64,000 nt of DNA, taken from contig NIVC01002078.1 of assembly GCA_002269645.1 (NCBI GenBank), positions 1 to 64,000 on the forward strand. The letters are read 5' to 3'. The notes beneath the pieces were generated by a model that worked only from the letters and a program-made list of their open reading frames with translations, did no database searches and was not told the origin of the DNA. Position numbers and translations under genes: made by a program. Within the stretch, counting starts at the first letter, position 1. The number at the start of each line of letters is the position of its first letter. The stretch comes from Macrostomum lignano. Its lineage: Eukaryota. Positions 8,825-47,923 of this stretch are shown here, piece after piece.

Positions 8825-9120
8825 TACCCCTCAGGAATCGCCCCAAATCTACCCATCCCGAATCGCCCCAAATCCACCCATCAGGAATCGCCCCAAATCC
8901 ACCCATCAGGAATCGCCCCAAATCCACCCATCAGGAATCGCCCCAAATCCACCCATCAGGAATCGCCCCAAATCCACCCATCAGGAATCGCCCCAAATCC
9001 ACCCATCAGGAATCGCCCCAAATCAACCCTTCAAGAATCACCGCTAAATCCATCCCTCAAGAATTACCTCCAAATCAACCCCTCAAGAATCATCCCAAAT
9101 CAACCCCCAAGAATCGCCTC
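8825..9120. repeat. Minisatellite, ~25 bp unit (AGGAATCGCCCCAAATCCACCCATC)
   Basis: About 6 near-perfect copies plus degenerate flanking copies, ~230 bp upstream of the first BK-beta-like ATG. Confidence 0.9.
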
Positions 9121-9344
9121 GCCCTAAATATACAGCCAAAAATGGCCACCAATATCAGACTGGTTTCAGAATCACCCCGCCAGAAATGTAAATCTCAATG
9201 CCGCAATGCAGCAGACTGGGCCCAGCTGAAGGCTTCCATTTGCCAGCCAGCCAACCATGTTCGCACAATGCATATTCAAATAGTATAAAGCAAGTCCACA
9301 CGAGAACAGCGCTCTAACCAAAGATTCCCTTTAAGTGTTTCGTC

Positions 9345-10344
9345 ATGGCTTTACGCAGATGCCACAAACTTTGCAACGTCATCGGCTTGGCAAAGATTGT
9401 ATTCCTCACCTGCGTATCGTTGATCGCCTGCGGTTTAATAGTGTCCAGCATCCTTGCCTATCTCATCATATTGCCGTACTATCGCGAGTCGCAATTTCAA
9501 CCGACCAGCTGCGAATATCTTGGCGAAGATTTGCACTATTGCATGCGCAACCAACGGGAAAGCTATGGCTACTTGTGCAAGAAGGAGAAGTGCAGATTCC
9601 CATGCTACGTTGTTCGGGTCAACGTGTCTGGTCTGTCAACAGCTGGAACTCTGTTTGAGAACTACTTGACGTTTTCCGACGTGTACGAGGTGTGTGTACA
9701 AACGAATAATTTCAGCCAAACTGTTGTACATACTCAGGTCACTATCTTTCTAAAAACCTTCCTCCGAATGAACAGAAACACCCTCTTCAATGAGCACATT
9801 ACGGTGCGTCTCTCTGCCCTTTATCTATGTACATTCCCTTCTGCCCTTCACTGTACATCATCATTCTTTCCAAATGTACATACATTCCCTTTCCAAACTT
9901 CACTGCGCATCATCGGTCTCTCGATCTCTGCCTTTCGCTGTACATATGAGCTATTTCAAACCCTTACTGTACACTTCTGGCCTCCCTCTACCCCTAAATG
10001 TACATTCAGGTCGTTTGAATTTTCCTACCCCTCAACTCCGCCCCAATCAGGAGGGCTGCAGTTCCTCGCCCTGTCTGCCAGAGCCAACGGAGAACGTAGA
10101 GATGACCCAGCGCTACATTCGCACCCTGAGGCATAGAAGAAACTTCACCTGCTATTATCGAGGTGACGACAACACTGACCCCAAGAGATCGGTGCTGCTC
10201 ACTAAGATCTACACAAAAGAGCAGGCTAAGCACTGCGCCATCTGGCCAGCATTTGCTGTCTCAATTGGCGCCATCGTGCTCATCGGAACTCACTACTGCG
10301 CTGGGTGCACCGTTTGGACTAAGGATAAAACTGTTATTGCCTGA
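9345..10344 (+). CDS. BK channel beta-subunit (KCNMB/CaKB)-like / TipE-like two-TM protein, paralogue 1 (212 aa)
   Basis: Exons 9345-9689 (GAG/GTGTG) and 10051-10344 (AATCAG/GAG), phase 0. TM1 VFLTCVSLIACGLIVSSILAYLIILPY; Cys-rich loop with F.PTSC, FPCYVVRVNVS, LFENY, CSSSPC, NFTCYY; SVLLTKIYT then TM2 AIWPAFAVSIGAIVLIG. The motif order parallels KCNMB (PCL.VNV..LY..CS..P..F.C..V...Y....L.WP). Confidence 0.8.
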
Positions 10345-11404
10345 ATAGCCAGTAGAACTACGAGTTGAGTAGATTGCTCATTTATATTAGACCTTTGGAT
10401 TTGGTCATATAGAGATAATTCTGATCTTTGGTATTACGACAAAAGCTTAATTCCATACATGTTGCATGCATTCAATGCGTGTTAAGTTGCTATGCCTGAA
10501 TATGTCGAAGCTGGAACGCACAGCAGACAGACCGCCCGCTGAGAATGTCAATGGGCGAAACCGTGTATTGGGTAAGCATTCAATTTAAGACACGTGCATA
10601 TTCAACCCACGATTGTCTATGGCCAAAACCGTGTATGGAAAGAGTATTTAGGACATTAACCAGTTGAGTTCAGACCATAGATCATATGTATATAAGATGT
10701 ATGGTTCAGACATTAAAACTCGGAGCCTTTAGACAAAAATGCGTAATTTGTGACGCAGAAGTCGAACAAGTGATAAAGTAAATTGGCATTTTGTGATGCA
10801 CATATTTTATAGCGACTGTGACTAAACTGTCAGGCCACATGTGTGCTCAATCAGATATTTTCATGGGCCAAGCAGCTGGTCAGGAAGTGCAGTGCGTTAG
10901 CTAACCAGGGTGCACTCTTGACAACCGGGATGACATCCAAGCCTGACTCCGCGATTCTCTGCAGCACCAAGGGAACTCCAATTCTGTAGATGCTATCCGT
11001 CTGGAGGACTCTCCAGCTCCATTGGCGGCACTTGTCTGAATTTGACTGCTCTGTGTCTTAAATTCAATGCTGTGTCGTGCCTGTGCCAGAGACTGTTTTG
11101 ACCATAGACAAGAGTAGAAATATTGTTGAACATTATTGTCATTGTCTTGAAATGAATGCTCGGATTCTTAAATAAAGTTAAAAAGTGGTAATTTATATTA
11201 ATTGGCTGCTCAGGCAGCTACGCGTCTCAACATTTTCAGATCATTTTCAGCCCTTTGCACTCTATTCATATTGGTTTATTATGGAATTTAATGCTGTCAA
11301 GACACTTCTTAAATATATTTTTGTGTGAAATACACTCTCAGTTATTTGCCTACATGTTTCTCTCGTTTTGTTATAAAAAGGTTGATTATTGCAATAAATG
11401 CTCA

Positions 11405-13894
11405 AAAACAACAACAACAAAATACGCAACCCCGCATGCAAAGTCATAGTTAGGGCAGGGCGCGTCAGATGGCGCGCCGCAGAGCCTGGGAGCGAACGAA
11501 GTCCGCTCCGTTGGCAGTGTCGGGGCGCCCCAGCGTCGCACAGCAGGCAGTCCACGTATCGACGGGTTCGGGCCAGACCCCGCCTGAACGGACCCTGCAA
11601 GGTGAGCAGCAGGACGTCCTGAACAGGTTGGGGGCAGTAGCCCTCGGCCCGGATCACGTGGCCCGCCAGTTGAAGTCGCCACCGGCGCAGGATGGTGGAC
11701 GGGCGCTGCAGCTTGGCCCGATCGTACAGGGCCTCGGTCCCGACGCTCTCGTCAGCTCGAAAGGCCGCACGGAGCAGCCCTGAGTGCGCCGAGTCCAGCT
11801 GCCGCTCTAGCGTAACGTCTAGCGTCTAGCGCTCTAGCGTAGCCGTCAGCGTCCACGTCTCGGCGTTGTAGAGCAGGACGGTTTCGACCACCGCCTGCCA
11901 CAGCCGAGCCCTCTGGCGGTCGGGCAGCGCTTCAGACTGGAGGACGGCTCGGATCGAACGAAAGGCCGCCCAGGCGAATCCCCTGCGCCGCCGGAGGTCT
12001 TCCTCCACGTGGGGCACCAGACCGCCGAGGTAGGTGAACCGCTGGCAGCGTGCGAGCTTGGTCGTCTGCCAGTCTGCGCCGCGGCACGTCAGGTCCGCTG
12101 GGATGTCGGCCGGCACAGTCAGCACCTGTGCATGTTGCGCTGGAGGACACCAATACCGATGCGCTGGAGGACCTGCTTGACCGGCTGGATCTGGTGTCCG
12201 CGAACACCCAGTTCCGCAAGCCCCCTGCCCGCCTGGTCACCTTTGCGGGCTGCAAGAGAAGGCGGCGGAACGCACGCGGACGGAATGCCACGAGGAGACT
12301 GGCGCAACTCGATCATGCGCTGGTTCGCACTCGCGAGCGCCGCCGCGTCACCAACTGCGACACCATGGCTCCGCTGGCTCTCCGGTCAGACCACCAACTC
12401 CTGATCTGCGACTTGCGGCTCCGCGACCAGCTCTACCGACCGCCAAAGCAGCGGCCACGGCGCTACTATCGCGCACTGTTGGACACCCGCGTGAAGCGTC
12501 AATTCGCGGGTGCCTTCGTCGGCGCGCTTGGATACCAGCGCGAGGTGGAGTATTCCGACATCAGCACCGCCGTTAGAGCCGCTGCAGAGCAGACGGTCCC
12601 GCTGATGCGGCCAGCGCAGAAATCGCTGCCTGTCTGGCAGAGCGACCCCATCATCAGGCAGAGCGACCCCATCATCAGGCAGGCGCGGCTCAACATCGAG
12701 CGACTCCGCAGAAACCGGAGGCCCACAGGCGACGCTGAAGACGCATTTGAGCGCCTTCTTGACGAGCGGCAGCAGGCCGCTGTCGACGACGCCATTAGGT
12801 CCATCACTGCAGCCGGCCCCGACGTGAAGAGCCGCGCAGTATGGACGGCCGTCCGGACTCTGACGGGGCGCAACAAGCGCGTGGCGCTGAACCTGGCCGG
12901 CGACACCCCGGAGGAGCGCAGGAATGAATTGCGCGACTTCTTCGCCGGCATCGTGAACGCGCCCGCGTCGCCGCTGCCCGCCAGCTTTGCGCTCCCACTG
13001 GACACGCCGCTCCCAGCTGAGGAGGACTTCTGCACCAGACCAGTCACCAAGGAGAACGTTGTGCTGTTCGCTCGGAAAACATCAGGCGGCAAGGCGCTCG
13101 GCCCCGACGAAGTCCCGGTCGAAGCGCTGCGGCTCCGCTGTGTGCCCTCCCAGGTCACAGGCGTCATGAACCACGTGCTCGCTGGCGCTCCTGCGCCTAA
13201 CCGAGTGGACCGTCGCGCACATCGTGCCGATCCCGAAGAAGGCAGGGACAACGCGGAAAGAAGACCACCGCGGGATCTCGCTGATGTCCTGCACCGCGAA
13301 GCTCTTCAACCGGCTGCTGCTCGATCGTCTGCAGTCGGTGCTGGACCCGTACCTGCGGTACGAGCAGAACGGATTCCGGCCGCAACACGCGGTACAGTGA
13401 CACAGATCCTCGCACTCTGCCGGGTCATCGAGGAGGCGCGCATCCGCCAGTCTACGCTGATCATTGTCTTCGTTGACTTTCGAAAGGCGTTTGACTCGGT
13501 GTTGAGAGCCGCACTTCCCTTTGTCCTTCGAGCCTACCGGGTACCCCAGCAGCTAATCGACGCAGTCATGGCGCTGTATTGCAATACTCGAGCTGCTGTG
13601 GTGACGGCGGACGGCCTGTCTGACCTGTTCGATACTTCATCAGGAGTTCTGCAGGGCGACACGCTAGCGCCGTTCCTCTTCGTGCTGCTGCTGGACTGGG
13701 TGCTTCGGACCGCACTCCCCTCGGCTGTCGACTGCTTCCTACTGCGCAGACGCATCGGTCGCCGACACGGCGAAAAGCGCCTGAGCGTGCTTGGCTACGC
13801 CGACGACCTCGCCCTCCTGTCCTCGTCCGTTGAAGGCGCCCAGCGCCAGATCGACAGGCTGGTCGAGGTGGCATCGAGCGTCGGTCTGATCGTC
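11405..13894 (-). mobile_element. 5'-truncated, 5'-inverted non-LTR retrotransposon (APE endonuclease remnant plus reverse transcriptase; RTE-like) with a 9-bp target-site duplication
   Basis: TSD AAATGCTCA at 11396-11404 and 13895-13903. The minus-strand segment ~12128 to 11405 encodes the RT C-terminus (FTYLGG, LYNAETWTLT, RLQLAGHVIR), a stop at 11465-11467 and a short (TTG)n tail. The plus-strand segment ~12126-13894 encodes QLDHAL..SDH (APE end) and RT motifs FVDFRKAFDS, GVLQGDTLAPFLF and LGYADD, with a frameshift pair near 13200 and 13385. Confidence 0.92.
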
Positions 13895-14196
13895 AAATGC
13901 TCATAATACTACTGTCAGGAACAGAGATCATGTTTTAGCTATTCTATCAGAATTTAAGCAAATTGGTTTAATATCTTAGAAGAAGTCTTTAAATCAATGT
14001 TTCGTTATTGAAAACCAAATTTTTGTGCGCTTTTAAGCCGATAATTTTCTTGCTGTAAAATGTAAAATGTATGAAATAATTTTTCGAGAAAATAGAGAAA
14101 ATGACAACAGCATCATGCATAGCTAGTGCTTCTGTTTTTTCTGTTCTTGTTCATTGATTGAGTGTCGATCAGTCTGATCAAGATGCTATGCATCGA

Positions 14197-15570
14197 TCAG
14201 GCAATAACAGTTTTATCTTGAGTCCACACGGTGCACCCAGCGCAGTAGTGAGTTCCGATGAGCACAATGGCGCCAATTGAGACAGCAAATGCTGGCCAGA
14301 TGGCGCAGTGCTTAGCCTGCTCTTTTGTGTAGATCTTAGTGAGCAGCACCGAGTTCTTCTGGCGAGAGTCTGGGCCGCGAAAGTAGCAGGTGAAATTGCG
14401 GCGACGTCGCAGGGTTTTAATGTAGCGCCGGGTCATTTCCACGTTTTCTACCGCCTCGGGTAGGCAGGGCGCCGAGCTGCAGTTTGTCTGGAAGGGCGGT
14501 GGAGGCGCAGCCGGGGGTTATAATTGTTTTAGACTAGAACGAGTGTACGTAGGGGGTTAGAGTTTGCTGGGGTAATTGGTTTGGTTTCGCCTTTGCCCCT
14601 TTTCAAATGTACATTCGTTAGTGTACACATACCGTCAGAGAGTTGGGATCTCTCCGCCTTTAAATAAATTTAAATGTACATTAAACATTTGTTCAATTGG
14701 AGGGCGGGGCGCAGCAGGGGGTAAGAATTGTTTTCAGGCCTGGCCCAGATTGGAGCGCCAGTGACTTCTATGGCGTTGACTAGATGTACATTCGTGAGTG
14801 TACACATGCGGTCCGAGAGTTAGTGGGTTTCTCTCCACCTATATTTAGATGTACATTAAACATTTCTTCAATTGAGGGGGGCGGAGGCGCAGCAGGGGGT
14901 AAGAATTGTTTTCAGGTCTGGCCCAGAATGGAGCGTCACTGCGTCAGTGATTTCCGGAAGGGGGGGGGGGTAAATGGGCTTTGCTTTGGCGTTAAATAGA
15001 TGTACATTCGTGAGTGTACGCACTACACAGGGGGTCAGAGATTTTCAGGTTTTTCTCTGACCTAGCCTGTATTTTATTTTTCGTCGGAGACTTGTTTAAT
15101 TTTAAATAAGGTTCATACACAAACAAAAGAGGATCCTACACGTTAGGCAACTCTGATGAATATATCATTTTTTCAAAGATTAGATGTTTCACAATTTCAG
15201 GAACAGAAACAGAACAGTGCAGTTTCTTCAACAAAGTTACCTTATCTTGCTCCAGATAAGTGAGAAAATTTTCAAACAGTACACCTTGCTCAGGCACGCC
15301 CGAGATGTTGACCCTGACCATGTAGCAGGGATAGCTGCTTCTATCCTTGGCGCACTTGCTTTCGCAGTCAATAATACGCTTCATCTCTTCGCCAAGGTAC
15401 ACGCAGCTGGTCTGCTCGAATCGCGCCTCTCGGTAGTACGGCAGAATGATTAAATAAGCTAGGATACCGCCAACTATGACTCCGCAGGTGATTAGTGATA
15501 CACAGGTAAGAAAAACGTATTTGGCTATGCCGATCACATTGCAGAGGCGGTGACAGCGGCGAAGAGCCAT
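14197..15570 (-). CDS. BK channel beta-subunit (KCNMB/CaKB)-like / TipE-like two-TM protein, paralogue 2 (206 aa)
   Basis: Exons 15570-15241 (AAG/GTAAC) and 14487-14197 (TTCCAG/ACA), phase 0. MALRRCHRLCNVIGIAKYVFLTCVSL... and SVLLTKIYTKEQAKHCAIWPAFAVSIGAIVLIGTHYCAGCTVWTQDKTVIA are nearly identical to paralogue 1. Confidence 0.82.
14590..15025. repeat. Degenerate ~185-200 bp tandem duplication (about 2.3 copies) in the intron of paralogue 2, rich in ATGTACAT
   Basis: ATGTACATTCGT(T/G)AGTGTACAC starts at ~14606, ~14784 and ~14999; GGCGCAGCAGGGGGTAAGAATTGTTTTCAGG occurs twice. Confidence 0.8.
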
Positions 15571-15914
15571 GTCCGTTAGCGCTGTTTTAGTCAATGGGGT
15601 GCAGAGCAAAACCTGAAATGGTTACAGGGTAGCTTTTCAATGATATTTGCATGTCATCGTCATAATACATTTCAACAGGTGGCAGCTTTAATCCAACCCT
15701 ACTCATAACTTTCAGCTGCTCTCTCCTCACCAGACTAAACTAGGACTTTGTGACGCGAATTGTCCCCACCCACAGTTAAGATGAGCAACGCGGGCGTGGC
15801 GTAGATTGCGTCGTCTGTTTTTTTCCTGTCAAGTAGCACAATATCCAACTCAACAGTTCAACATAGTACCGTAGCCAACTCAAAAGTGCATAAAATTCAG
15901 TTGATCTGCAGATT

Positions 15915-15924
15915 AGCCAATCAG
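15915..15924. promoter_or_regulatory. Candidate CCAAT box (AGCCAATCAG) upstream of paralogue 2
   Basis: Matches the NF-Y-type consensus RRCCAATCAG ~350 bp upstream of the minus-strand ATG at 15570; position only. Confidence 0.25.
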
Positions 15925-16047
15925 AGCGCTTCTGTTGCGCAACTGTTGCGCAATAGCGACCATGGATACAAAAGGCCGAACCAACTTGCACTTGGCGGAG
16001 CAGCTGGGCACAAGAGAAACTGCACAGAAAAGAGTGAGTCTTCTATA

Positions 16048-17142
16048 CGAGGGGTGTCGGGGAAATTCGGACACTTTTAATCCCAGAGCAAAGCGGCACA
16101 TATTTTCCCCATGAATTCAGTCGCGTGTATTTTGGTCATTTCTTTCAAAAGTTAAGTGAAAAAACCATCGCAATGTATGTCTGTAAATGTTTGTAAAAGT
16201 TTAAAATATATAAAAAGCGATGTCCTCAAAAATGAATTTTAGTCGTTCATCACGCTCACGATGGTGTCAATAATCAGAGATAGTCGGTGATCAATAATCG
16301 ATCGATAATCCATAATCGGTGATCAATAATCGATCGATAATCCATAATCGGTGATCAATAATCGATCGATAATCCATAATCGGTGATCAATAATCGATCG
16401 ATAATCCATAATCGGTGATCAATAATCGATCGATAATCCATAATCGGTGATCAATAATCGATCAATAATCCATAATCGGTGATCAATAATCGATCGATAA
16501 TCCATAATCGGTGATCAATAATCGATCGATAATCCATAATCGGTGATCAATAATCGATCGATAATCCATAATCGGTGATCAATAATCGATCGATAATCCA
16601 TAATCGGTGATCAATAATCGATCGATAATCCATAATCGGTGATCAATAATCGATCGATAATACATAATCGGTGATCAATAATCGATCGATAATCCATAAT
16701 CGGTGATAAATAATCGATCGATAATCCATAATCGGTGATCAATAATCGATCGATAATCCATAATCGGTGATCAATAATCGATCGATAATCCATAATCGGT
16801 GATCAATAATCGATCGATACTCCATAATCGGTGATCAATAATCGATCGATACTCCATAATCGGTGATCAATAATCGATCGATACTCCATAATCGGTGATC
16901 AATAATCGATCGATAATCCATACTCGATCATATGGATTAGTGGATTAGTGGCAGTGATATAATCGATTAATGGCACTGCTATGGTTTTTCTCACGTAACT
17001 TTTGACAGAAATGACCAAACTACACGCGACTGAATTCATTGGAAAGTATGTGCCGCTTTTAAATGACACCAAAGTTGTGCTTGCAGCTGCTACTGTTTTT
17101 GGTCTGGGATTAAAAGTGTCCGAATTTCCCGGACACCCCTCG
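16048..17142. mobile_element. Non-autonomous Tc1/mariner-type element (MITE-like) with long terminal inverted repeats, TA target duplication and an internal satellite
   Basis: Left end TA|CGAGGGGTGTCGGGGAAATTCGGACACTTTTAATCCCAGA; right end TCTGGGATTAAAAGTGTCCGAATTTCCCGGACACCCCTCG|TA (1 mismatch in 40). Inverted similarity continues to ~16172 and ~16977, with a ~40-bp gap in the left arm. No transposase ORF. Confidence 0.88.
16285..16922. repeat. Satellite, 32 bp unit (ATAATCGGTGATCAATAATCGATCGATAATCC), ~20 copies, inside the MITE
   Basis: Near-perfect tandem copies; each contains the palindromes TGATCA and ATCGATCGAT. Confidence 0.97.
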
Positions 17143-17461
17143 TACTTGAAATGACTATGAATGATGCACACGACTTGGCCTTTTGGTAGCTCTGAATTAA
17201 CAATTTACAACTTGATTTGGCATTTTGCCACTTGAGTTGAAAATGACTTGCAATAGCTGCTTTAACTGTGCCAATTTGATAGTAAAAAAATGTCCAAGTT
17301 CCAACACTTGGCTCAGGGCATGCAGCTCTGCATGGACAAAGCTGAGTTACATGTAGAGAACTACGCATTTTCAACTCGTATTATGGTGTCAGGTTTCTGA
17401 CCGGCCATTGCATGCCGCTGATTCCAGCTCTATTACAGCTCTCGAACAAACCGCACTCACG

Positions 17462-17463
17462 GA

Positions 17464-17519
<56 letters not shown>
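17462..17519. repeat. (AG)n microsatellite
   Basis: Direct inspection. Confidence 0.95.
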
Positions 17520-17523
<4 letters not shown>

Positions 17524-18024
17524 AGAATAAGAAAAATGCCCCTCAGACCTATGCATTATTTGTGCGGTGTTTTCCCTTCTCCCTAAGATCCCAATTGGGA
17601 TTTAGAGAGGGACAGAGAGAGGGAGGGTTTCTGTGAGCAAATGGGTGCAGCCATGGCTCCGTGGTCTAGCTATCGGATTTATAAGGCTTGAGTAGGTTTA
17701 ACAAGGGCTGTACCAACCAACGCGTGTTCAACTCTGGCTCTCTCTCTGCCTCCTTTGCCTTGAACGTTATTTTATTCTCTAAGAGTAGCTACGTTTTTTT
17801 AAAACGGATTTTGCATACTCAGATGGATTAACAATTAAAGCACGGGATTCTATTTAGAGAGCAGGACAAAACGGTAAGTGAAGCTAAATGATCGATTCTA
17901 ATATCTTGCCTTCATGTTAGCTATATTCCAACTCGTCATGATCATACGACTGGGAACCCTCTATACGATTCGATGACAGGTAGGAATTCAGGATCACGGC
18001 TCAACTGGAGCTGTAGGAACTAGC

Positions 18025-18945
18025 CCAATGGGAGGGCTGGAACCCCCAAGTTCACGACTCAATAGGAAGGGTAGAACCCTAAGTCTACGACTCAATAGAA
18101 GGGGTAGAACCCTAAGTCTACGACTCAATAGAAGGGGTAGAACCCCCAAGTTCACGACTCGACAGAGGGGTAGAACCCCCAAGTTCACGACTCAATAGGA
18201 GGGCTAGAACCCCCAAGTTCACGACTCAATAGGAGGGCTAGAACCCCCAAGTTCACGACTCAATAGGAGGGCTAGAACTCCCAAGTTCACGACTCAATAG
18301 GAGGGCTAGAACTCCCAAGTTCACGACTCAATAGGAGGGCTAGAACCCCCAAGTTCACGACTCAATAGGAGGGCTAGAACCCCCAAGTTCACGACTCAAT
18401 AGGAGGGCTAGAACCCCAAGTTCACGACTCAATAGGAGGGCTAGAACCCCCAAGTTCACGACTCAATAGGAGGGCTAGAACTCCCAAGTTCACGACTCAA
18501 TAGGAGGGCTAGAACCCCCAAGTTCACGACTCAATAGGAGGGCTAGAACCCCCAAGTTCACGACTCAATAGGAGGGCTAGAACCCCCAAGTTCACGACTC
18601 AATAGGAGGGCTAGAACCCCCAAGTTCACGACTCAATAGGAGGGCTAGAACCCCCAAGTTCACGACTCAATAGGAGGGCTAGAACCCCCAAGTTCACGAC
18701 TCAATAGGAGGGCTAGAACCCCCAAGTTCACGACTCAATAGGAGGGCTAGAACCCCCAAGTTCACGACTCAATAGGAGGGCTAGAACCCCCAAGTTCACG
18801 ACTCAATAGGAGGGCTAGAACCCCCAAGTTCACGACTCGACAGGAGGGGTGGAACCCCCAAGTTCACAACTCGACAGGAGGGGTAGAACCCCCAAGTTCA
18901 CGACTCGACAGAGGGGTAGAACCATAGGTTCACGATTCAACAGGA
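18025..18945. repeat. Minisatellite, 34 bp unit (AAGTTCACGACTCAATAGGAGGGCTAGAACCCCC), ~26 copies
   Basis: Homogeneous core with degenerate ends; ends ~120 bp upstream of the paralogue 3 ATG. Confidence 0.95.
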
Positions 18946-19061
18946 GGGTCTGAACCTGTTACGGTGACTTTTTTACCGAAGTGACAAATTTATATAGTAG
19001 CAAGCCTGTACTTATACTTTCAGTAGCCAAGAGTAATCGAGCCATAAACTAGGCTAAAACC

Positions 19062-20260
19062 ATGGCAAAGAATCGAAGCTCGACAGGAAATCGGCGTTCA
19101 ACTGGAGGAGCAGCAGAGGGCGGTCGGTGCGATCGGTTCTGCATCGTTCTGGGCGCCGGCAGGTGGCTGTACCTACTCGGTGGCACCCTGTTCACTCTCG
19201 GCTTCGTAGTTGAAATGATCTGCCTGGGCATCATCATTGGGCCCTATTTAAATGAGCACAAATTCAAGGCTGCAGTGTGCAAATTCCAATCGAGTTATTA
19301 CACCGGAGATCAGTTCTGTCAGGACGTGTTCTCCAGAGACCCGTCGAGTTTTCCGTGTTTGACAGTTCGAGTCACCTTCAATGGAACTTCGAGCGGATTC
19401 GCTGATGCTGGTGTTGCCACAATCTATCTCATTTATACCTACTATGCAGAGGCTACCCTGCCAGCTAAGGTTTGAACACGTTTTTTGTTTTGATTAAATA
19501 TTTTGTTTTAATGCTACTTTTTTTGTTCAAAAGTTTTCCTGGAAAAGTGTATCTAGAATTGAACCCAGCAATTGTGCTAATAATAATAGTAATAATAATA
19601 CATAGCCTAATGATAAGACAACAAAAACTGTACGACGCTTTATACTTTTTAACTCATTTTAATAAAATTATCGTTGCCTTTCATTTAGGTAATTTTAAGA
19701 GTATAAATTTCAAGATAGAAAATATTGCCTTTCCGATCATTTTTTCAAAGAATTTAAGTTTCATTATGAAAATACTTTTTTATCTTTACTATCATGCTTG
19801 TTTTTTTAAATATTATATTATATTATATATTATAAATTATAAATTATATTATATATTATATAATCAATTTATTGGATATTTTAACAAGAACAGCGAGTGC
19901 TGTCGCGAATACCGTCTAAATTAGCGCGCTTTAATAGCTTTTTTTCACTTCCTTTTTTCTTTTTTCCAGTGCGTATCCAGAATCTGCTACAAGGACAAGC
20001 TGCTCAATGCCCGCCAGATCGCGAATCTCAACGCCACAATGTACAGCGATGGCAATGGCTTCCAATGCTATGTTCGCAAGGAGTCAATTAACGGCTGGGA
20101 AGAATATTCGGCACTGAGAGGCAGAGAGTTCAGTCAAGGTCAGGTGTTTCACTGCATCCTCTGGCCACTGCTAGCCTGCGGATTGGGACTCGTGCTCATC
20201 TGGTTTGTGTACTGCGTAGCTGGCTGCAGCGCCGTCTGGGGCAGCGCCATGAGCATTTGA
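19062..20260 (+). CDS. BK channel beta-subunit (KCNMB/CaKB)-like / TipE-like two-TM protein, paralogue 3, divergent (232 aa)
   Basis: Exons 19062-19469 (AAG/GTTTG) and 19970-20260 (TTCCAG/TGC), same phase-0 intron position as paralogues 1 and 2. TM1 WLYLLGGTLFTLGFVVEMICLGIIIGPY, FKAAVC, FPCLTVRVTF, CVSRIC, FQCYV, TM2 HCILWPLLACGLGLVLIWFVYC. Confidence 0.78.
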
Positions 20261-20384
20261 GAGACTGTGACGTCATCTGCAATTGCCCTCCGCAAATTTA
20301 TAGAGATTTTGACGTCATCTCCAACCTCTTTCTCTAACTAGGCAAGAGTGAAATCATTCGCAACGCTGTTTTCAGTTTATACAA

Positions 20385-20912
20385 GTAACGTCATCCATAG
20401 ACCACCCCCAATTTTAGAGAGCGACGTCATCCATAAACCATCGATCCTCCAATTTTAGAGTGACGTCATCCATAAACCACCCCCATTTTAGAGAGTGACG
20501 TCATCCATAAACCACAGATCCTCTAATTTTAGAGAGTGACGTCATCCATAATTTGGTTTATGGGTAGATCGGTGGTTTATGGGTAGTTTATGGGTAGATT
20601 CCATATCGGTGGTTTATGAGTAGACTCCATAAACCACCGATCCTCCAATTTTAGAGAGTGACGTCATCCATTAACCACCCCCATTTTAGAGAGTGACGTC
20701 ATCCATAAACCACATATCCTCTAATTTTAGAGAGTGACGTCATCCATAAACCACATATCCTCTAATTTTAGAGAGTGACGTCATCCATAAACCACATATC
20801 CTCTAATTTTAGAGAGTGACGTCATCCATAAACCACATATCCTCTAATTTTAGAGAGTGACGTCATCCATAAACCACCGATCCTCCAATTTTAGAGAGTG
20901 ACGTCATCCATA
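20385..20912. repeat. Minisatellite, 36-41 bp unit (AGAGTGACGTCATCCATAAACCACATATCCTCTAATTTTAG)
   Basis: About 12 copies, with a short reversed-orientation stretch around 20550-20630; most units carry TGACGTCA. Confidence 0.92.
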
Positions 20913-21769
20913 ACCCCCTTTTCCCACTATTTGAAGATGGTGACTTTTCCACAGCCTTATTTTCTGATCTATTAAGAGTGTTGTCGTTCAAAAACCTTCG
21001 TAGACCAATTTGTTTTAATGACTCAACTGTGTTTATTTTTTTGTTGCTAAAAAAACTTTTAATAACCGCAGTAATTTCTGCATGATGCGAGCTAATTATT
21101 CGCAATTTTTGTTCTTTTAAGTGTCTTCAAATTCGTGCAGTAATTTGAACTGATAAAGAAAACTTGCAGAAAACGCAGCTATCCGTGTTTTCAAAGACGA
21201 TCAGATCTCACTAAACTCTCCAATTTTTAAGAAACTTTCTCTGCATGCTACTTTCAGTAGGCTAATTCAGTAGACTCAACAAAAACTGTGAAAAAAGAGA
21301 GGAATCGTTATGATGAATATCTACAATAGCTTCGCGTACGAAAACCTTTCCAAGTTTGAGAGTGGGTGCAAGCTTTGCCAAATCGAAGGCATCGGACACA
21401 CGCGAGAGAAGGATGAGTTCAGATCGATCTTACTTTTAGCGCGACACGAGGAAGGAGGCCAGAGCGAGTCTATGAATATTGAGTGACACGGGCTGTACGA
21501 GCTGTGGCTGCAAACTCACATATTCTCTAGCTGACCGCGTCCGAGTAATGAGCTAGAGCTCTGCAGAGTTGTGCTATCGATTCCGTAAATCCAGCCCAAC
21601 CTGCCAGCTCCCAAGACTTAAGTTTGTACACCTCATTCACTGCCCAGCTGATGAGACAGAGCAGTTGACGTTAAGCTCGTAATTTTGCCACCGAAGTTCT
21701 TAGTTAAAGTGGATGCCTGCCCCAGTCAATGATTGCTACTGTCTCTCAATTTGTTCTGCTGAAATTCCC

Positions 21770-22050
21770 CAATCCCTGAATTCCCCAATCCTTACATGTA
21801 AATTTTCCCTACCTTAAATTCCACTATCCCAAATCGCCTATTCCCTAAATTCCCATCCCCTAAATCCCCATCCCCTAAATCCCCATCCTTTAAATTCCCC
21901 ATCCCCATAAATCCCCATCCCCTAATTCCCATCCCCTAAATTCCATCCCCTAAATCCCCTATTCCCTAAATTCCCCATCCCCTAAATCTCCATCCTCTAA
22001 ATTTCCTACTCCATAAATTCTATAAATACCTCATTCCCTAAATTTTCCTA
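21770..22050. repeat. Degenerate 15-17 bp repeat (AAATTCCCCATCCCCT)
   Basis: Direct inspection; boundaries approximate. Confidence 0.8.
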
Positions 22051-22295
22051 AATTCTTCATTCTCTTAACTTTCCATTGTCTTTTGATTGTTTATAAATCA
22101 ATTGTTCTTTAAGAAAATCATTTATCATTTTAAGTAACGGCATTTAACACATTCTAGTGAATTTTACAATCAATTAAAAGTAATATACAATTTTCTATAG
22201 TTTTACGCTATTCGCGCATGCCAGAGTCAAGCCATATACTTCTGTAGGAGCTCAGTACTCTCAACGGTGTAAGAATAGGAGACAGAAATAACCGT

Positions 22296-22332
<37 letters not shown>

Positions 22333-22729
22333 AGAGTTGGCCAGCAATTAATAATTTATTAACGTATCAAAAACTACGCATAACAGAGCCAAGGCCGAAG
22401 AAGCTGATAGTCTCGTAGTCTCAGATTTTAACCCCCCCCCCTGTCTGAGCTAGAATAGTGGGGAGCGCTGAGTGCGCAGCCTTAAGCATCCATGTCCTGA
22501 GGCAGCGACTGGCTTAGACCGGCTTTGCGTATGGGTAAGGATAACAAAGGGCTTGACTGACAATACTATGGTTGGGAATCTGGGAGAGTGGGTGAGGGGA
22601 TGAGGAGTGAAGGCAGGAGTGCATGAGGATAATAGAACTGCATAGGGAATTGGAAATGGGAGATATGGGAGGCTGATGAAAGAGAAGATAGCAAAATAAG
22701 GGGAAAGTGATTGAATAGAGAGTGGCAGA

Positions 22730-23280
22730 ATGGAGTGACAGACAATAGGGTGACAGTGAAGAGAGTGAAAGTAAAGAGAGTGACAGTGTAGAGAGTGACA
22801 GTGAAGAGAGTGACAGTGAAGAGAGTGACAGTGAAGAGAGTGACAGTGAAGAGAGTGACAGTGAAGAGAGTGACAATGAAGAGAGTGACAGTGAAGAGAG
22901 TGACAATGAAGAGAGGGGCAGTAAATAGAGCGACACAAAGAATAAGACAGAAACTTGAGAGTGACAGAAGAGAGTGACAGTGAAGAGAGTGACAGTGAAG
23001 CGAGTGACAGTGAAGCGAGTGACAGTGAAGAGAGTGACAGTGAAGAGAGTGACAGTGAAGAGAGCGACACAAAGAATTAGACAGAAACTTGAGAGAGGGA
23101 AACAAGAGAGACAGAAGAGAGTGACAGAAGAGAGTGACAGAAGAGAGTGACAGAAGAGAGTGACAGAAGAGAGTGACAGAAGAGAGTGACAGAAGAGAGT
23201 GACAGAAGAGAGTGACAGAAGAGAGTGACAGAAGAGAGTGACAGAAGAGAGTGACAGAAGAGAGTGACAGAAGAGTGTAA
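22730..23280. repeat. Purine-rich minisatellites: 15 bp (GAGAGTGACAGTGAA) followed by 13 bp (GAGAGTGACAGAA)
   Basis: Direct inspection; periodic ORFs (VTVKR, SLSSL) confirm. Confidence 0.92.
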
Positions 23281-23844
23281 AAGAGAAAACTAAGTGAAAA
23301 TTGAGAGGCAAGAATGTCACTTTCCTGACGAGAAGGAATATGAGCAGGGCTAGGGACGGCAAGGAGCCCATCTGAAAAGGCGTCTGAAAACTAGAAAAAA
23401 GTTGCATCAGGTCGAGATGCAGTTAACTAGGAAAGCCATTAATTCAGAGTCGCTAGTCGTAAGGCAGAGCATTTTCACGCTTCAAGAAAAACATGTAAAC
23501 ACTCGGGTTTAAAGACAACTGCACTGTGCTTTCCTGGCCTTATAATTGTCTAGAAGCATTGCTAATCTCATGCGGGCTGGAAGGGGGGAGGATAAATACG
23601 GGAGCGGAGAAGGAAATTTCACGGGACATTAATCCATACGGGGGAAGTGAGGGTTTGTAAGTAATCGCTATATGACTAACATTAATAATTTATGCGGGCA
23701 CACACGGGGGATAGGAGGCTGAGTTTAGGCACCCTTAACTCATTCCCATCACCCACTCTGTGCGCGCTTTCGGTTTTCTTTTGGAGTGTGAGCAAACTTG
23801 TAGTGGGGCCCCGTCAGGCCTGGCAGGGTGTGACTCTCCTTCTC

Positions 23845-25390
23845 TCACAGTCTGACTCTCTTTATTTCACAATCTGACTCTCTTTCTCTCACAGTCTGAC
23901 TCTCTTTATTTCACAATCTGACTCTTCTTCTCTCACAGTCTGACTCTCTTTATTTCACAATCTGACTCTCTTTCTCTCACAGTCTGACTCTCTTTATTTC
24001 ACAATCTGACTCTTCTTCTCTCACAGTCTGACTCTCTTTATTTCACAATCTGACTCTCTTTCTCTCACAGTCTGACTCTCTTTATTTCACAATCTGACTC
24101 TCTTTCTCTCACAGTCTGACTCTCTTTATTTCACAATCTGACTCTCCTTCTCTCACAGTCTGACTCTCTTTCTCTCACAGTCTGACTCTCTTTATTTCAC
24201 AATCTGACTCTCTTTCTCTCACAGTCTGACTCTCTTTATTTCACAATCTGACTCTTCTTCTCTCACAGTCTGACTCTCTTTATTTCACAATCTGACTCTC
24301 TTTCTCTCACAGTCTGACTCTCTTTATTTCACAATCTGACTTTTCTTCTCTCACAGTCTGACTCTCTTTATTTCACAATCTGACTCTCCTTCTCTCACAG
24401 TCTGACTCTCTTTCTCTCACAATCTGACTCTTCTTCTCTCACAGTCTGACTCTCTTTATTTCACAATCTGACTCTCTTTCTCTCACAGTCTCTCCTTCTC
24501 TCACAGTCTGACTCTCCTTCTCTCACAGTCTGACTCTCCTTCTCTCACAGTCTGACTCTCCTTCTCTCACAGTCTGACTCTCCTTCTCTGTCCGATTCTC
24601 CTTCTTTCCCAGTCTGACTCTCCTTATCTCACAGTGTAACTCTCCTTATCTCACAGTGTAACTCTCCTTATCTCACAGTGTAACTCTCCTATCTCACAGT
24701 GTAACTCTCCTATCTCACAGTGTAACTATCCTTATCTCACAGTGTAACTATCCTTATCTCACAGTGTAACTCTCCTTATCTCACAGTGTAACTATCCTTA
24801 TCTCACAGTGTAACTATTCTTATCTCACAGTGTAACTCTCCTATCTCACAGTGTAACTCTCCTATCTCACAGTGTAACTCTCCTATCTCACAGTGTAACT
24901 ATCCTTATCTCACAGTGTAACTATTCTTATCTCACAGTGTAACTCTCCTATCTCACAGTGTAACTCTCCTATCTCACAGTGTAACTCTCCTATCTCACAG
25001 TGTAACTCTCCTTATCTCACAGTGTAACTATCCTTATCTCACAGTGTAACTATCCTTATCTCACAGTGTAACTATTCTTATCTCACAGTGTAACTCTCCT
25101 ATCTCACAGTGTAACTCTCCTATCTCACAGTGTAACTCTCCTTATCTCACAGTGTAACTCTCCTTATCTCACAGTGTAACTCTCCTTATCTCACAGTGTA
25201 ACTCTCCTTATCTCACAGTGTAACTATCCTTATCTCACAGTGTAACTCTCCTATCTCACAGTGTAACTCTCCTATCTCACAGTGTAACTCTCCTATCTCA
25301 CAGTGTAACTCTCCTATCTCACAGTGTAACTCTCCTATCTCACAGTGTAACTCTCCTTATCTCACAGTCCCTCCTTCTCTCACAGTGGGA
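23845..25390. repeat. Compound minisatellite, 22-23 bp units (TCTCTCACAGTCTGACTCTCTT grading into TATCTCACAGTGTAACTCTCCT)
   Basis: Two related unit types in succession, switching near 24620. Confidence 0.95.
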
Positions 25391-26274
25391 CTCTCCTTAT
25401 CACACCCTGACCTACTCCGCGTCTGTCAGTCTAACCCAGATCATTTAATTTTATCTGAAATAGTAATTCATATCAGCAGTATCAATATTGTCGAAAAAAC
25501 GACACTACTTACCCCTGGCTTGAAATATCTCAAATTCACTTCAGAAGCCGAATGGTTGAAAATTAAACGTTGGTTTATTTCTGCAATACGCCTATAGAAG
25601 CCTCAGTAAATTGCAGGTAAAAATCCCAAGTTATATAGCTATAGAATTCATCCAATCGCAGCGCATGGAGCAGATCCCATCACCCATAACCCTTGTGCAT
25701 TCGTCGGCATCTACGGTATACAGTACTCTCTTCATTCTGCTCAGGGCTCAACTGATCTGCCTTGCTCCCTGCCTATCTCTCTCATTCAATCTCGAATTGC
25801 CAGCCAACCTTTGTTGCTGATCAGGCCTTCAGAGGAGGAAACGTTTTTGACAGTCGAAAAAAATGCAGTCAAAAAATTGCTTTTTTATCCTTGGCTGCGG
25901 GTCTACCAGCAAGGCACTGTGATTTCATGCATGTAACAGTCGCTGCGCTAAATAATTACCTGAATCCATATTCCATCTATATCTAGACTTAATCTATTTT
26001 TAAGCTGCAATCAATTTACCCGTGCGGACTCAAAAGCATCCCCTTTTGATGTAAGAAACAATGGAAGGTTCGCTATTGCTGTGATTTACCTGTTCCGTAT
26101 TGTAATTTTTCTCTTTCCTGAGCTGCTTTTAGTGACTTGTAGCGCGAATCAAGCTAGACAACTGAGATATAGAAAAATATGTAGTGCCAAATTCTGTGTC
26201 CTTTGATTCTGTATATTCTGCCTCCATTCATTTCAGGACACCCACCTCACATCCAGCTTGTCCATTCTATAAAT

Positions 26275-30953: not shown

Positions 30954-31004
30954 AAGCGCACGAAGAATTTGGCGGCGATACCACTGTGTAGAAGATTCTG
31001 TTCA

Positions 31005-32560
31005 GGGTGTAGATTAATGATTGTAATAAACTATTCAGGGTGTAGATTAATGATTGTAATAAACTATTCAGGGTGTAGATTAATGATTGTAATAAACTAT
31101 TCAGGGTGTAGATTAATGATTTTAATAAACTATTCAGGGTGTAGATTAATGATTGTAATAAACTATTCAGGGTGTAGATTAATGATTTTAATAAACTATT
31201 CAGGGTGTAGATTGATGGTTGTAATAAACAATTCAGGGTGTAGCTTTATGATTGTAATAAACTATTCAGGGTGTAGATTAATGATTGTAATAAACTATTC
31301 AGGGTGTAGATTAATGATTGTAATAAACTATTCAGGGTGTAGATTAATGATTGTAATAAACTATTCAGGGTGTAGATTAATGATTGTAATAAACTATTCA
31401 GGGTGTAGATTAATGATTGTAATAAACTATTCAGGGTGTAGATTAATGATTTTAATAAACTATTCAGGGTGTAGATTGATGGTTGTAATAAACAATTCAG
31501 GTGTAGCTTTATGATTGTAATAAACTATTCAGGGTGTAGATTTATGATTGTAATAAACTATTCAGGTTGTAGATTTATGAGTGTAATAAACTATTCAGGG
31601 TGTAGATTGATGGTTGTAATAAACTATTCAGTGTGTAGCTTTATGAGTGTAATAAACTATTCAGGGTGTAGATTTATGAGTGTAATAAACTATTCAGGGT
31701 GTAGATGTATGAGTGTAATAAACTATTAAGGTTGTAGATTTATGAGTGTAATAAACTATTCAGGGTGTAGATTGATGGTTGTAATAAACTATTCAGTGTG
31801 TAGCTTTATGAGTGTAATAAACTATTCAGGGTGTAGATTGATGGTTGTAATAAACTATTCAGTGTGTAGCTTTATGAGTGTAATAAACTATTAAGGGTGT
31901 AGATTGATGATTGTAATAAACTATTCAGGGTGTAGATTAATGATTGTAATAAACTATTCAGGGTGTAGATTAATGATTGTAATAAACTATTCAGGGTGTA
32001 GATTAATGATTGTAATAAACTATTCAGGGTGTAGATTAATGATTGTAATAAACTATTCAGGGTGTAGATTAATGATTGTAATAAACTATTCAGGGTGTAG
32101 ATTAATGATTGTAATAAACTATTCAGGGTGTAGATTAATGATTGTAATAAACTATTCAGGGTGTAGATTTATGAGTGTAATAAACTATTCAGGTTGTAGA
32201 TTTATGAGTGTAATAAACTATTCAGGGTGTAGATTGATGGTTGTAATAAACTATTCAGTGTGTAGCTTTATGAGTGTAATAAACTATTCAGGGTGTAGAT
32301 TTATGAGTGTAATAAACTATTCAGGGTGTAGATTTATGAGTGTAATAAACTATTCAGGTTGTAGATTTATGAGTGTAATAAACTATTCAGGGTGTAGATT
32401 GATGGTTGTAATAAACTATTCAGTGTGTAGCTTTATGAGTGTAATAAACTATTCAGGGTGTAGATTTATGAGTGTAATAAACTATTCAGGGTGTAGATTT
32501 ATGAGTGTAATAAACTATTAAGGGTGTAGATTGATGGTTGTAATAAACTATTGAGGGTGT
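31005..32560. repeat. Minisatellite, 33 bp unit (TATTCAGGGTGTAGATTAATGATTGTAATAAAC), ~46 copies
   Basis: Starts ~50 bp after the claudin stop; 11-aa periodic ORFs. Confidence 0.97.
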
Positions 32561-33571: not shown

Positions 33572-33628
33572 TGTTGCTGGGCCACCCTCACAGTTCCTCA
33601 GTTGCTGGGCCAGCCTCCCAGGTCCTCA
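33572..33628 (+). repeat. Two-copy remnant of the 28-bp GCTGGGCCAGCCTCCCAG family
   Basis: GTTGCTGGGCCACCCTCACAGTTCCTCAGTTGCTGGGCCAGCCTCCCAGGTCCTCAG. Confidence 0.8.
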
Positions 33629-33651
33629 GTGTTAATCAAACTGTGCCCAAA

Positions 33652-43313: not shown

Positions 43314-47923
<4,610 letters not shown>

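What the first reader, a model, noticed from the sequence alone, without database searches (positions are those of the whole stretch)
9345..20260. Cluster of three BK-beta/TipE-like ion-channel auxiliary subunit genes in an invertebrate genome
Seen: three genes (+,-,+) encode 206-232 aa proteins with two TM helices and a Cys-rich loop, all with one phase-0 intron at the same position just before the C-x-S-x-x-C motif, and a conserved HC.[IL]WP...YC.(A)GC..VW C-terminus. Established: this topology and the PC..V.V..S / CS..P / F.CY / V...[LI]Y / WP motif order characterise KCNMB BK beta subunits, best known from vertebrates, and the related arthropod TipE/TEH sodium-channel auxiliary subunits, which are also clustered in Drosophila. 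Inference: this is a local lineage-specific expansion of channel auxiliary subunits whose partner channel (Slo1, Nav or other) is unknown.
Basis: partly seen in the sequence, partly recalled or inferred. Interest (0 to 1): 0.75.

Follow-up and report, generated by a model that had tools for sequence, protein, structure and literature searches.

The report
Flatworm BK-channel beta-subunit gene cluster
Three neighbouring genes of the flatworm Macrostomum lignano encode real relatives of the vertebrate BK potassium-channel beta subunits; the family is old and already auto-annotated in databases, but no invertebrate member has been tested functionally.

Summary
The window, from Macrostomum lignano, carries three intact two-exon genes of 212, 206 and 232 aa. 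Each encodes two transmembrane helices, a Cys-rich extracellular loop of about 125 aa, and one phase-0 GT..AG intron before the C-x-S-x-x-C motif.

All three score well above Pfam's cut-off for CaKB, the BK beta-subunit family (46-69 bits against 25.1). None matches TipE. A profile of them finds human beta4 at E=1e-16. A confident AlphaFold model (pLDDT 91.5) matches only beta4 chains from hSlo1 complexes (E=7e-14, TM 0.65). A bird KCNMB1 gene has a phase-0 intron at the same place.

The genes are under purifying selection. They are intact on a second contig that is 94-99% identical. They also have a paralogous two-gene cluster elsewhere in the genome.

Relatives occur in flukes, tapeworms, annelids, nemerteans, amphioxus, a tunicate, a hemichordate, a coral and a sponge. 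Many of these are already named "beta-like" by pipelines. A 2012 paper lists KCNMA1 and KCNMB2 homologues in the M. lignano transcriptome.

These are therefore new, uncharacterised members of a known family. The most likely role is Slo1 auxiliary subunit. That role is inferred, not shown.

The parts
9345..9689 (+). g1 exon 1: start codon, N-terminus, TM1 and the first half of the extracellular loop.
   Evidence: ORF and splice reconstruction; CaKB 57.1 bits for the spliced protein.
10051..10344 (+). g1 exon 2: C-S-S-S-P-C motif, the rest of the loop, TM2, the ...YCAGCTVWTKDKTVIA tail and the stop codon. The intron is 9690-10050, GT..AG, phase 0.
15241..15570 (-). g2 coding exon 1 (ATG at 15570-15568).
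   Evidence: the GenBank model P0001 shares the junction; CaKB 68.8 bits.
14197..14487 (-). g2 coding exon 2, including the stop codon. The intron is 14488-15240, GT..AG, phase 0.
25511..25602 (-). Probable 5' non-coding exon of g2. It has a GTAAGT donor and is spliced to an acceptor at about 15613. The resulting intron of about 9.9 kb contains g3 on the opposite strand.
   Evidence: The N-terminal extension of GenBank model P0001 maps here at 97% identity. Canonical donor and acceptor are present in the window. The link is inferred from an annotation on the near-identical contig, not from RNA reads.
19062..19469 (+). g3 exon 1.
   Evidence: CaKB 46.1 bits.
19970..20260 (+). g3 exon 2, including the stop codon. 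The intron is 19470-19969, GT..AG, phase 0, immediately before the Cys codon of CVSRIC.
10188..10344 (+). Probable gene-conversion tract shared with g2 (about 14352-14197 on the - strand). The last 51 codons are about 97% identical in DNA. The rest of the two genes is saturated at synonymous sites, and identity ends at the stop codon.
   Evidence: DNA alignment. dS is 0.087 in the tract against about 3.8 upstream.
12050..13906 (+). Degenerate non-LTR retrotransposon fragment with a reverse-transcriptase domain, lying between the convergent g1 and g2. It is not part of the gene family but is part of the cluster's anatomy.
   Evidence: RVT_1 hit, E=2.6e-14; broken frames in the ORF list.

Best explanation
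The three genes encode flatworm members of the CaKB (KCNMB, BK-beta) family. These are type-III two-pass membrane glycoproteins with cytoplasmic N- and C-termini and a disulphide-stabilised extracellular domain.

Proposed mechanism, by analogy with human Slo1-beta4: up to four copies dock through TM1 and TM2 in the clefts between the voltage-sensor domains of the M. lignano Slo1 (KCNMA1-type) tetramer, and their extracellular domains form a cap over the pore. The effect would be to tune gating kinetics, apparent Ca2+/voltage sensitivity, surface expression and access of pore blockers. The different paralogues (g1/g2-type and g3-type) would give tissue-specific BK variants.

What is shown: family membership, fold, topology features, conserved gene structure, purifying selection, and presence of a KCNMA1 homologue in the species.

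What is inferred: physical association with Slo1 and any effect on currents.
For: - Pfam: CaKB scores of 57.1, 68.8 and 46.1 bits against a cut-off of 25.1, and no other family.
- Profile search: a profile of the flatworm proteins hits human beta4 and the beta2N-beta4 chimera full-length at E=1e-16, with the loop cysteines, the PC..V.V, CS...C, F.CY and H..LWP motifs, and the N-x-S sequon aligned.
- Structure: AlphaFold models have pLDDT 67.9 with the shallow alignment and 91.5 (pTM 0.79) with the deeper one. Both retrieve only beta4 chains of hSlo1 complexes (E=2e-12 and 7e-14, TM 0.55-0.65). The next hit has E of 0.15.
- Wider family: a whole-library HMM search gives 192 representatives. Of the top 149, together with g2 (150 sequences scanned), 135 are CaKB by Pfam, and vertebrate KCNMB1-4 are among them.
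- Gene structure: the bird KCNMB1 gene has a phase-0 intron at NPK|CSYVP, the position of the flatworm intron.
- Selection: omega is about 0.08-0.2 between g1 and g2, and all three genes are intact on a colinear contig that is 94-99% identical.
- Partner: homologues of KCNMA1 and KCNMB2 are listed for the M. lignano transcriptome (PMC3447372).
- Reference mechanism: the beta4 mechanism is taken from PMC6934384.
Against: - No functional or interaction data exist for any invertebrate CaKB protein that I could find.
- Identity to vertebrate beta subunits is only 20-25%.
- The distant arthropod cousins TipE/TEH regulate Nav channels and had no effect on Slowpoke currents (PMC3240667). Partner choice in this superfamily is therefore evolutionarily labile.
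- Flatworm members carry a conserved cytoplasmic tail, C-x-[VA]-W-x-x-[DE]-x-x-[VIL]-[IV]-[AV]-COOH, that vertebrate beta subunits lack. This hints at lineage-specific interactions.
- g2 and g3 have 7 and 6 loop cysteines, against 8 in beta4.
- I did not confirm the M. lignano Slo1 sequence myself.
Confidence: 0.6

Rival explanations
1. The proteins are channel auxiliary subunits, but for a partner other than Slo1. Candidates are a voltage-gated sodium channel (as for TipE/TEH in insects), another Slo-family channel, or a Cav channel.
For: - TipE/TEH, the only invertebrate relatives with functional data, modulate Para Nav and not Slowpoke (PMC3240667).
- M. lignano expresses a voltage-gated sodium channel and several KCNT/KCNU-type homologues (PMC3447372).
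- The flatworm-specific C-terminal motif shows divergence from vertebrate beta subunits.
Against: - The proteins match CaKB strongly, and neither they (E<=10) nor their closest relatives (E<=0.01) match the TipE model.
- Fold, cysteine framework, glycosylation sequon and intron position all match KCNMB.
- The loop is short, like BK beta, and lacks the long loop or EGF-like modules of TipE/Teh3/4.
Confidence: 0.22
2. The proteins keep the BK-beta fold but have a role unrelated to channels, for example as adhesion or receptor-like surface glycoproteins or as trafficking factors.
For: - There is no functional evidence for any non-vertebrate CaKB protein.
- The family occurs in a sponge, an animal without neurons or muscle.
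- The conserved C-terminal hydrophobic tail could be a PDZ-binding or ER-export signal with its own function.
Against: - The transmembrane helices, which mediate almost all of the beta4-Slo1 contact (PMC6934384), are conserved as profile positions and are under strong constraint.
- Slo1 is found across metazoan species according to PMC3240667, so co-occurrence with the family is the rule.
Confidence: 0.13
3. The reading frames are decaying duplicates (pseudogenes) or annotation artefacts in a repeat-rich polyploid genome.
For: The surroundings are full of satellites and transposon remnants. M. lignano is a hidden polyploid with many redundant copies (PMC10468722 abstract).
Against: - The frames are intact and the splice sites canonical in both the window and the second contig.
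- Omega is well below 1.
- All family-defining residues are conserved.
- GenBank gene models exist, and a KCNMB2 homologue is listed in the transcriptome.
Confidence: 0.03

Closest known systems
Vertebrate BK (Slo1) beta subunits KCNMB1-4, Pfam CaKB PF03185; structural reference human beta4 in 6V22/6V35
   Same: - Two transmembrane helices and an extracellular domain of about 120 aa.
- Conserved framework: C...C..C...PC..V.V(N-x-S)...CS...C...F.CY...H..LWP.
- The same fold (TM 0.65).
- A phase-0 intron immediately before the CS...C motif.
- Small multigene family.
   Different: - Only 20-25% identity.
- The flatworm genes lack the vertebrate phase-2 intron after TM1.
- They have no beta2/beta3-type N-terminal inactivation ball.
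- g2 and g3 have 7 and 6 loop cysteines instead of 8.
- They carry conserved juxtamembrane cysteines (MALRRCxxLC... and ...YCAGC.VW) and a flatworm-wide C-terminal ...[DE]K[TP][VIL][IV][AV] tail that vertebrate beta subunits lack.
- Function is untested.
Flatworm CaKB proteins already in databases, e.g. [quoted passage not shown]
   Same: They belong to the same subfamily and share the CENKCSKD.S.FPC core and the GC.VW..DKTVIA tail, at 27-33% identity. They group with the M. lignano genes in the NJ tree, with 57% support.
   Different: They are from parasitic lineages, and several have long N-terminal or loop insertions (286-374 aa). The M. lignano genes form their own weakly supported clade and are arranged in two clusters.
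Arthropod TipE/TEH1-4 sodium-channel auxiliary subunits (Pfam TipE)
   Same: - Two-transmembrane topology with a disulphide-bonded loop.
- Genomic clustering.
- Proposed common origin with BK beta (PMC3240667).
- Nesting of family members inside an intron occurs in both: in insects the TipE cluster sits inside a host gene, and here g3 sits inside the 5' intron of g2.
   Different: - There is no detectable TipE profile match.
- TipE, Teh3 and Teh4 have longer loops, with EGF-like modules in Teh3/4.
- TipE/TEH act on Para Nav and not on Slowpoke.

Membership tests
CaKB / KCNMB (BK channel beta subunit, PF03185) | Match to the curated family HMM above the gathering score. | tested here: met
   57.1, 68.8 and 46.1 bits against 25.1, covering profile positions about 12-185 of 195.
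CaKB / KCNMB (BK channel beta subunit, PF03185) | Two transmembrane helices flanking an extracellular loop of about 120 aa, with both termini cytoplasmic. | tested here: met
   Two hydrophobic segments, loops of 128-138 aa, and N-terminal net charge of +3 to +5. AlphaFold helices span residues 2-48 and 165-193. Orientation is inferred from the positive-inside rule and the loop sequons, not measured.
CaKB / KCNMB (BK channel beta subunit, PF03185) | Conserved loop cysteine framework (four disulphides in beta4) and the PC..V.V / CS...C / F.CY / H..LWP motifs. | tested here: met
   Across 37 metazoan members, C82, V87, C113 and C144 (g2 numbering) are invariant. C56, C69, P81, C118 and P175 are at least 90% conserved. 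g1 has 8 loop cysteines, g2 has 7 and g3 has 6, so the fourth disulphide is not universal here.
CaKB / KCNMB (BK channel beta subunit, PF03185) | N-glycosylation site conserved in all beta subunits, just after PC..V.V. | tested here: met
   NVS (g1), NIS (g2) and NGT (g3). They align with beta4 NNS. Conservation of one site among beta subunits is stated in PMC6934384.
CaKB / KCNMB (BK channel beta subunit, PF03185) | Three-dimensional fold of the beta4 subunit. | tested here: met
Foldseek against the PDB: the top 10 hits are all beta4 or beta2N-beta4 chains, E=6.8e-14, TM 0.64-0.65 over 194 columns. The alignment used for the model contained vertebrate KCNMB sequences; no templates were used.
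CaKB / KCNMB (BK channel beta subunit, PF03185) | Shared gene structure with vertebrate KCNMB genes. | tested here: met
   Tyrannus savana KCNMB1 has a phase-0 intron at DRNPK|CSYVP. g3 has a phase-0 intron at LPAK|CVSRIC, and g1 and g2 have theirs two codons upstream. Only one vertebrate gene was examined.
CaKB / KCNMB (BK channel beta subunit, PF03185) | A Slo1 (KCNMA1) alpha subunit present in the same organism. | tested here: inconclusive
   Table 2 of PMC3447372 lists KCNMA1 among the human ion-channel genes with homologues in the M. lignano transcriptome. I did not retrieve or verify the sequence.
CaKB / KCNMB (BK channel beta subunit, PF03185) | Physical assembly with Slo1 and modulation of BK gating or pharmacology. 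| not testable with these tools
   This needs co-expression electrophysiology or biochemistry. No published data were found for any invertebrate member.
TipE / TEH (insect Nav auxiliary subunits, Pfam TipE) | Match to the TipE family HMM. | tested here: not met
   There is no TipE hit at E<=10 for g1-g3, and none at E<=0.01 among the 150 sequences scanned. I could not independently confirm that the TipE model is in this copy of Pfam-A.
TipE / TEH (insect Nav auxiliary subunits, Pfam TipE) | Long extracellular loop, with EGF-like modules in Teh3/4. | tested here: not met
   The loops are 128-138 aa, the length seen in BK beta, and no EGF domain is found. The TipE features are taken from PMC3240667.
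TipE / TEH (insect Nav auxiliary subunits, Pfam TipE) | Modulation of Para-type Nav channels. | not testable with these tools
   This requires electrophysiology.

The most novel reading that the evidence does not exclude
The flatworm (and perhaps wider spiralian) CaKB proteins form a functionally distinct subfamily. It would be defined by the conserved cytoplasmic C-x-[VA]-W...[DE]K[TP][VIL][IV][AV]-COOH tail and juxtamembrane cysteines. The tail could tether the channel complex to PDZ scaffolds or control ER export. The partner might not be limited to Slo1 and could include Nav. If so, these proteins would sit functionally between vertebrate BK beta and insect TipE, and would reveal what the ancestral metazoan subunit regulated.
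Probability: 0.15. Interest if true: 0.7.

Novelty: new member of a known kind. Interest (0 to 1): 0.38.

Why it matters
BK beta subunits are usually presented as a vertebrate or mammalian addition to an otherwise conserved Slo1 channel. For example, PMC6934384 calls auxiliary subunits 'a novel feature' of mammalian channels. Li et al. 2011 (PMC3240667) left open whether the common ancestor of BK beta and TipE regulated a potassium or a sodium channel.

The genes here are clear CaKB members with a vertebrate-type intron, in an animal where RNAi by soaking, in situ hybridisation and transgenesis are available (PMC3447372). Relatives reach corals and a sponge. That makes the ancestral-partner question directly testable.

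It may also matter for parasitic flatworms, whose orthologues are uncharacterised possible modifiers of a candidate drug-target channel.

The sequence-level discovery itself is not new. The proteins are in GenBank and UniProt with the Pfam domain assigned.

Tried and rejected
- **TipE membership.** Rejected: no profile hit.
- **Pseudogene or chance ORFs.** Rejected: intact frames in two copies and omega well below 1.
- **Further copies in the window.** None found by tblastn.
- **Literature on invertebrate or flatworm BK beta.** Seven full-text searches found no functional or evolutionary study of these proteins. The only mention is a table entry (KCNMB2, KCNMA1) for the M. lignano transcriptome.
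- **First bootstrap tree.** It timed out. It was redone with a faster Kimura-distance NJ. Deep nodes are weak, so the 'lineage-specific expansion' conclusion is tentative.
- **Locus look-up for P0003.** Nothing on record. The gene was instead found unannotated next to P0005 by tblastn.
- **Second word-indexed homologue search.** Dominated by sauropsid KCNMB1, so it added no taxonomic breadth, but it supplied a vertebrate locus for the intron test.
- **Long ORFs elsewhere in the window** (3305-4255, 30969-32521, 45872-46942, 61034-63919). They gave only low-complexity or repeat-driven Pfam hits and were not pursued.
- **Third homologue search.** I did not use it to fetch M. lignano Slo1, because a Slo1 query would be swamped by vertebrate hits.
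Full report
**What is in the sequence**

Reading 9000-20600 and listing ORFs shows three pairs of open reading frames. Canonical GT..AG introns join each pair into one gene.
- g1 (+): 9345-9689 and 10051-10344, 212 aa.
- g2 (-): 15570-15241 and 14487-14197, 206 aa.
- g3 (+): 19062-19469 and 19970-20260, 232 aa.

All three introns are phase 0. They lie immediately before the conserved Cys of the C-x-S-x-x-C motif in g3 (LPAK|CVSRIC) and two codons before it in g1 and g2 (VYE|EGCSS, QDK|TNCSS). tblastn of the three proteins against the whole window finds only these three loci.

Hydropathy gives two transmembrane segments per protein and a loop of 128-138 residues with 8, 7 and 6 cysteines. It also shows N-x-S/T sequons in the loop and a positively charged N-terminus.

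**Organism and independent gene models**

g2 is about 99.5% identical (one residue differs) to GenBank 'hypothetical protein BOX15_Mlig013936g3, partial [Macrostomum lignano]'. That model uses the same exon junction. The contig encoding it, NIVC01002305.1 of GCA_002269645.1, is colinear with window 5-39 kb in reverse orientation at 94-99% identity. It carries all three genes intact. It is either the same locus in another haplotype or subgenome of this hidden polyploid, or the same locus in another assembly.

**Family assignment**

- hmmscan against Pfam gives only CaKB (PF03185, BK channel beta subunit), at 57.1, 68.8 and 46.1 bits against a gathering score of 25.1. Nothing else appears up to E=10, so there is no TipE match.
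- A four-sequence flatworm profile hits human beta4 and the beta2N-beta4 chimera at E about 1e-16 over the full length. The loop cysteines and the PC..V.V, CS...C, F.CY and H..LWP motifs are aligned.
- The sequon after PC..V.V (NVS, NIS, NGT) aligns with beta4 NNS. Tao and MacKinnon note that one glycosylation site is conserved in all beta subunits (PMC6934384).
- An AlphaFold model from the shallow alignment (pLDDT 67.9) already retrieved only beta4 chains. With a 37-sequence alignment the model reaches pLDDT 91.5 and pTM 0.79. It matches 6V22 chain E at E=6.8e-14 and TM 0.65 over 194 columns, and the next non-beta4 hit has E=0.15.

**Gene structure shared with vertebrates**

I fetched a bird KCNMB1 locus (Tyrannus savana, L002) and reconstructed its exons exactly. 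Intron 2 is phase 0 and lies at ...DRNPK|CSYVP.... That is the position and phase of the g3 intron and is two codons from those of g1 and g2.

The bird gene has an additional phase-2 intron after TM1 that the flatworm genes lack.

Several mis-predicted vertebrate proteins in the hit list break at the same point. Examples are P0147, P0152 and P0112, the last with a transposase read through the intron. Many exon-2-only fragments from other animals start at QCSYS.... Together with the profile and fold evidence, this is strong evidence of common descent rather than convergence.

**Breadth of the family**

An exhaustive HMM search of 1.84 billion representatives gives 192 proteins at E<=1e-3. I scanned the top 149 of these together with g2. 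Of these 150 sequences, 135 are CaKB by Pfam and none is TipE.

Source names place relatives in the following groups.
- Flukes: Schistosoma spp., e.g. [quoted passage not shown]
- Cestodes: Hymenolepis, Sparganum, Schistocephalus, Anoplocephala.
- A nemertean: Tubulanus.
- Annelids: Owenia, Paralvinella, Lamellibrachia, Capitella.
- Deuterostomes: amphioxus, the tunicate Styela, the hemichordate Ptychodera.
- Non-bilaterians: the coral Stylophora and the sponge Corticium.

Several of these are already named 'beta-N-like' by RefSeq. The family is therefore ancient in Metazoa and known to annotation pipelines.

A 2012 overview of M. lignano ion channels lists both KCNMA1 and KCNMB2 among the human genes with transcriptome homologues (PMC3447372). 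I found no paper that studies any invertebrate CaKB protein. The structural literature still describes auxiliary subunits as a novelty of mammalian channels.

**Evolution of the cluster**

- g1 and g2 are convergent (tail to tail), with a decayed non-LTR reverse-transcriptase fragment between them.
- Over most of their length they are old duplicates. Synonymous sites are saturated, dN is 0.31 and omega is about 0.08.
- The last 51 codons are about 97% identical in DNA (dS 0.087), and identity stops at the stop codon. A gene-conversion tract over the TM2/tail segment is the simplest reading.
- g3 is only about 28% identical to g1 and g2.
- Window-versus-contig differences are few and mostly synonymous in g2 and g3.
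- A second locus, present on three contigs, carries a g3-type gene (P0005) followed 4-5 kb downstream by an unannotated g1/g2-type gene (P0003). Both have the same single intron.
- In a Kimura-distance NJ tree, g1+g2+P0003 and g3+P0005 each have 100% support. All M. lignano sequences together have 51%, flatworms 57% and the parasitic clade 79%.

The g3-type/g1-type pair therefore predates duplication of the cluster. g1/g2 is a further local inverted duplication. An expansion private to the Macrostomum lineage is plausible but weakly supported.

**Lineage-specific features**

Flatworm members share a cytoplasmic end of TM2 and tail of the form C-x-[VA]-W-x-x-[DE]-x-x-[VIL]-[IV]-[AV]-COOH. In g1 and g2 this reads ...YCAGCTVWT[KQ]DKTVIA. 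The tail is found in 18 of the representative clusters, from Macrostomum to Schistosoma and cestodes. It is absent from vertebrate beta subunits. g3 and P0005 keep the GC..W part but end differently.

The N-termini carry two conserved cysteines (MALRRCxxLC). From general knowledge, and untested here, juxtamembrane cysteines are candidate palmitoylation sites. A C-terminal hydrophobic-x-hydrophobic end could be a class II PDZ ligand or an ER-export signal.

**Mechanism**

The best-supported reading is that these are Slo1 auxiliary subunits working like beta4. TM1 and TM2 would wedge between neighbouring voltage-sensor domains, and four extracellular domains would form a crown above the pore. 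The N-terminal and inner-leaflet part of TM1 would influence gating kinetics (PMC6934384).

Everything up to family membership is shown here. The partner and the effect are inferred.

The main rival is a different partner channel, because TipE/TEH act on Nav and had no effect on Slowpoke (PMC3240667). I give the Slo1 reading about 0.6, another channel about 0.2, a non-channel role about 0.13 and a pseudogene or artefact about 0.03.

**Verdict**

It is a new, uncharacterised set of members of a known family that databases already label.

Interest is moderate. The value lies in making the ancestral role of the BK-beta/TipE superfamily testable in a tractable flatworm, not in the existence of the genes.

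Noticed in passing
window 15613-25510 (- strand intron) containing g3 at 19062-20260 (+): The GenBank model for the g2 homologue starts with an exon that maps to window 25602-25511. That exon has a GTAAGT donor and is spliced to an acceptor at about 15613. If real, g3 lies antisense inside the 5' intron (about 9.9 kb) of g2. Insect TipE clusters are also nested in an intron.
   Followed up: partly
L003 10001-16500; L004 9145-14775; L005 1995-8503 (M. lignano contigs NIVC01002654, NIVC01002729, NIVC01003352): There is a second, paralogous CaKB cluster: a g3-type gene (P0005) followed 4-5 kb downstream on the same strand by a g1/g2-type gene (P0003). P0003 is not in the gene table for these contigs. 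The cluster is present in three near-identical copies, consistent with hidden polyploidy.
   Followed up: partly
window 10188-10344 and 14197-14352: DNA identity between g1 and g2 switches sharply from about 70% to about 97% over the last 51 codons and ends exactly at the stop codon. This is a probable gene-conversion tract covering TM2 and the conserved tail.
   Followed up: yes
window 16046-17144: A foldback- or MITE-like element: inverted arms at 16046-16092/17098-17144 (96% complementary) and 16105-16164/16986-17045 (90%) flank a 32-bp x 20 tandem array at 16280-16926.
   Followed up: partly
window 18026-18956 and 20410-20913: g3 is bracketed by satellites. A 34-bp x 27.6 array lies about 100 bp upstream of its ATG. 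A 41-bp x 12.7 array starts about 150 bp after its stop, and every unit of that array contains the palindrome TGACGTCA (a CRE/ATF-type site).
   Followed up: no
window 11400-13906: A degenerate non-LTR retrotransposon remnant with broken frames, G+C-rich relative to its flanks. It includes an RVT_1 reverse-transcriptase domain (E=2.6e-14) and sits between the convergent g1 and g2.
   Followed up: partly
window about 28984-31000 (+); L001 4880-6684 (-): The neighbouring gene is annotated with Pfam Claudin_2 (PF13903). The first exon begins MNQYQPYQQQNGKSARMSRRFF... and contains a GLWEFC...GCWW motif. It is another small multi-pass membrane protein.
   Followed up: no
window 23828-25405 and 33645-38900: Very large tandem arrays with a period of about 22 bp produce the 1400-aa 'ORFs' seen in three frames (33598-38095). 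Other long ORFs in the window gave only low-complexity Pfam hits such as Cornifin and PT repeat.
   Followed up: partly
proteins P0002-P0138 (flatworm CaKB relatives): The conserved C-terminal tail C-x-[VA]-W-x-x-[DE]-x-x-[VIL]-[IV]-[AV]-COOH appears in 18 representative clusters across free-living and parasitic flatworms and is absent from vertebrate beta subunits. It may be a PDZ-ligand or export signal.
   Followed up: partly
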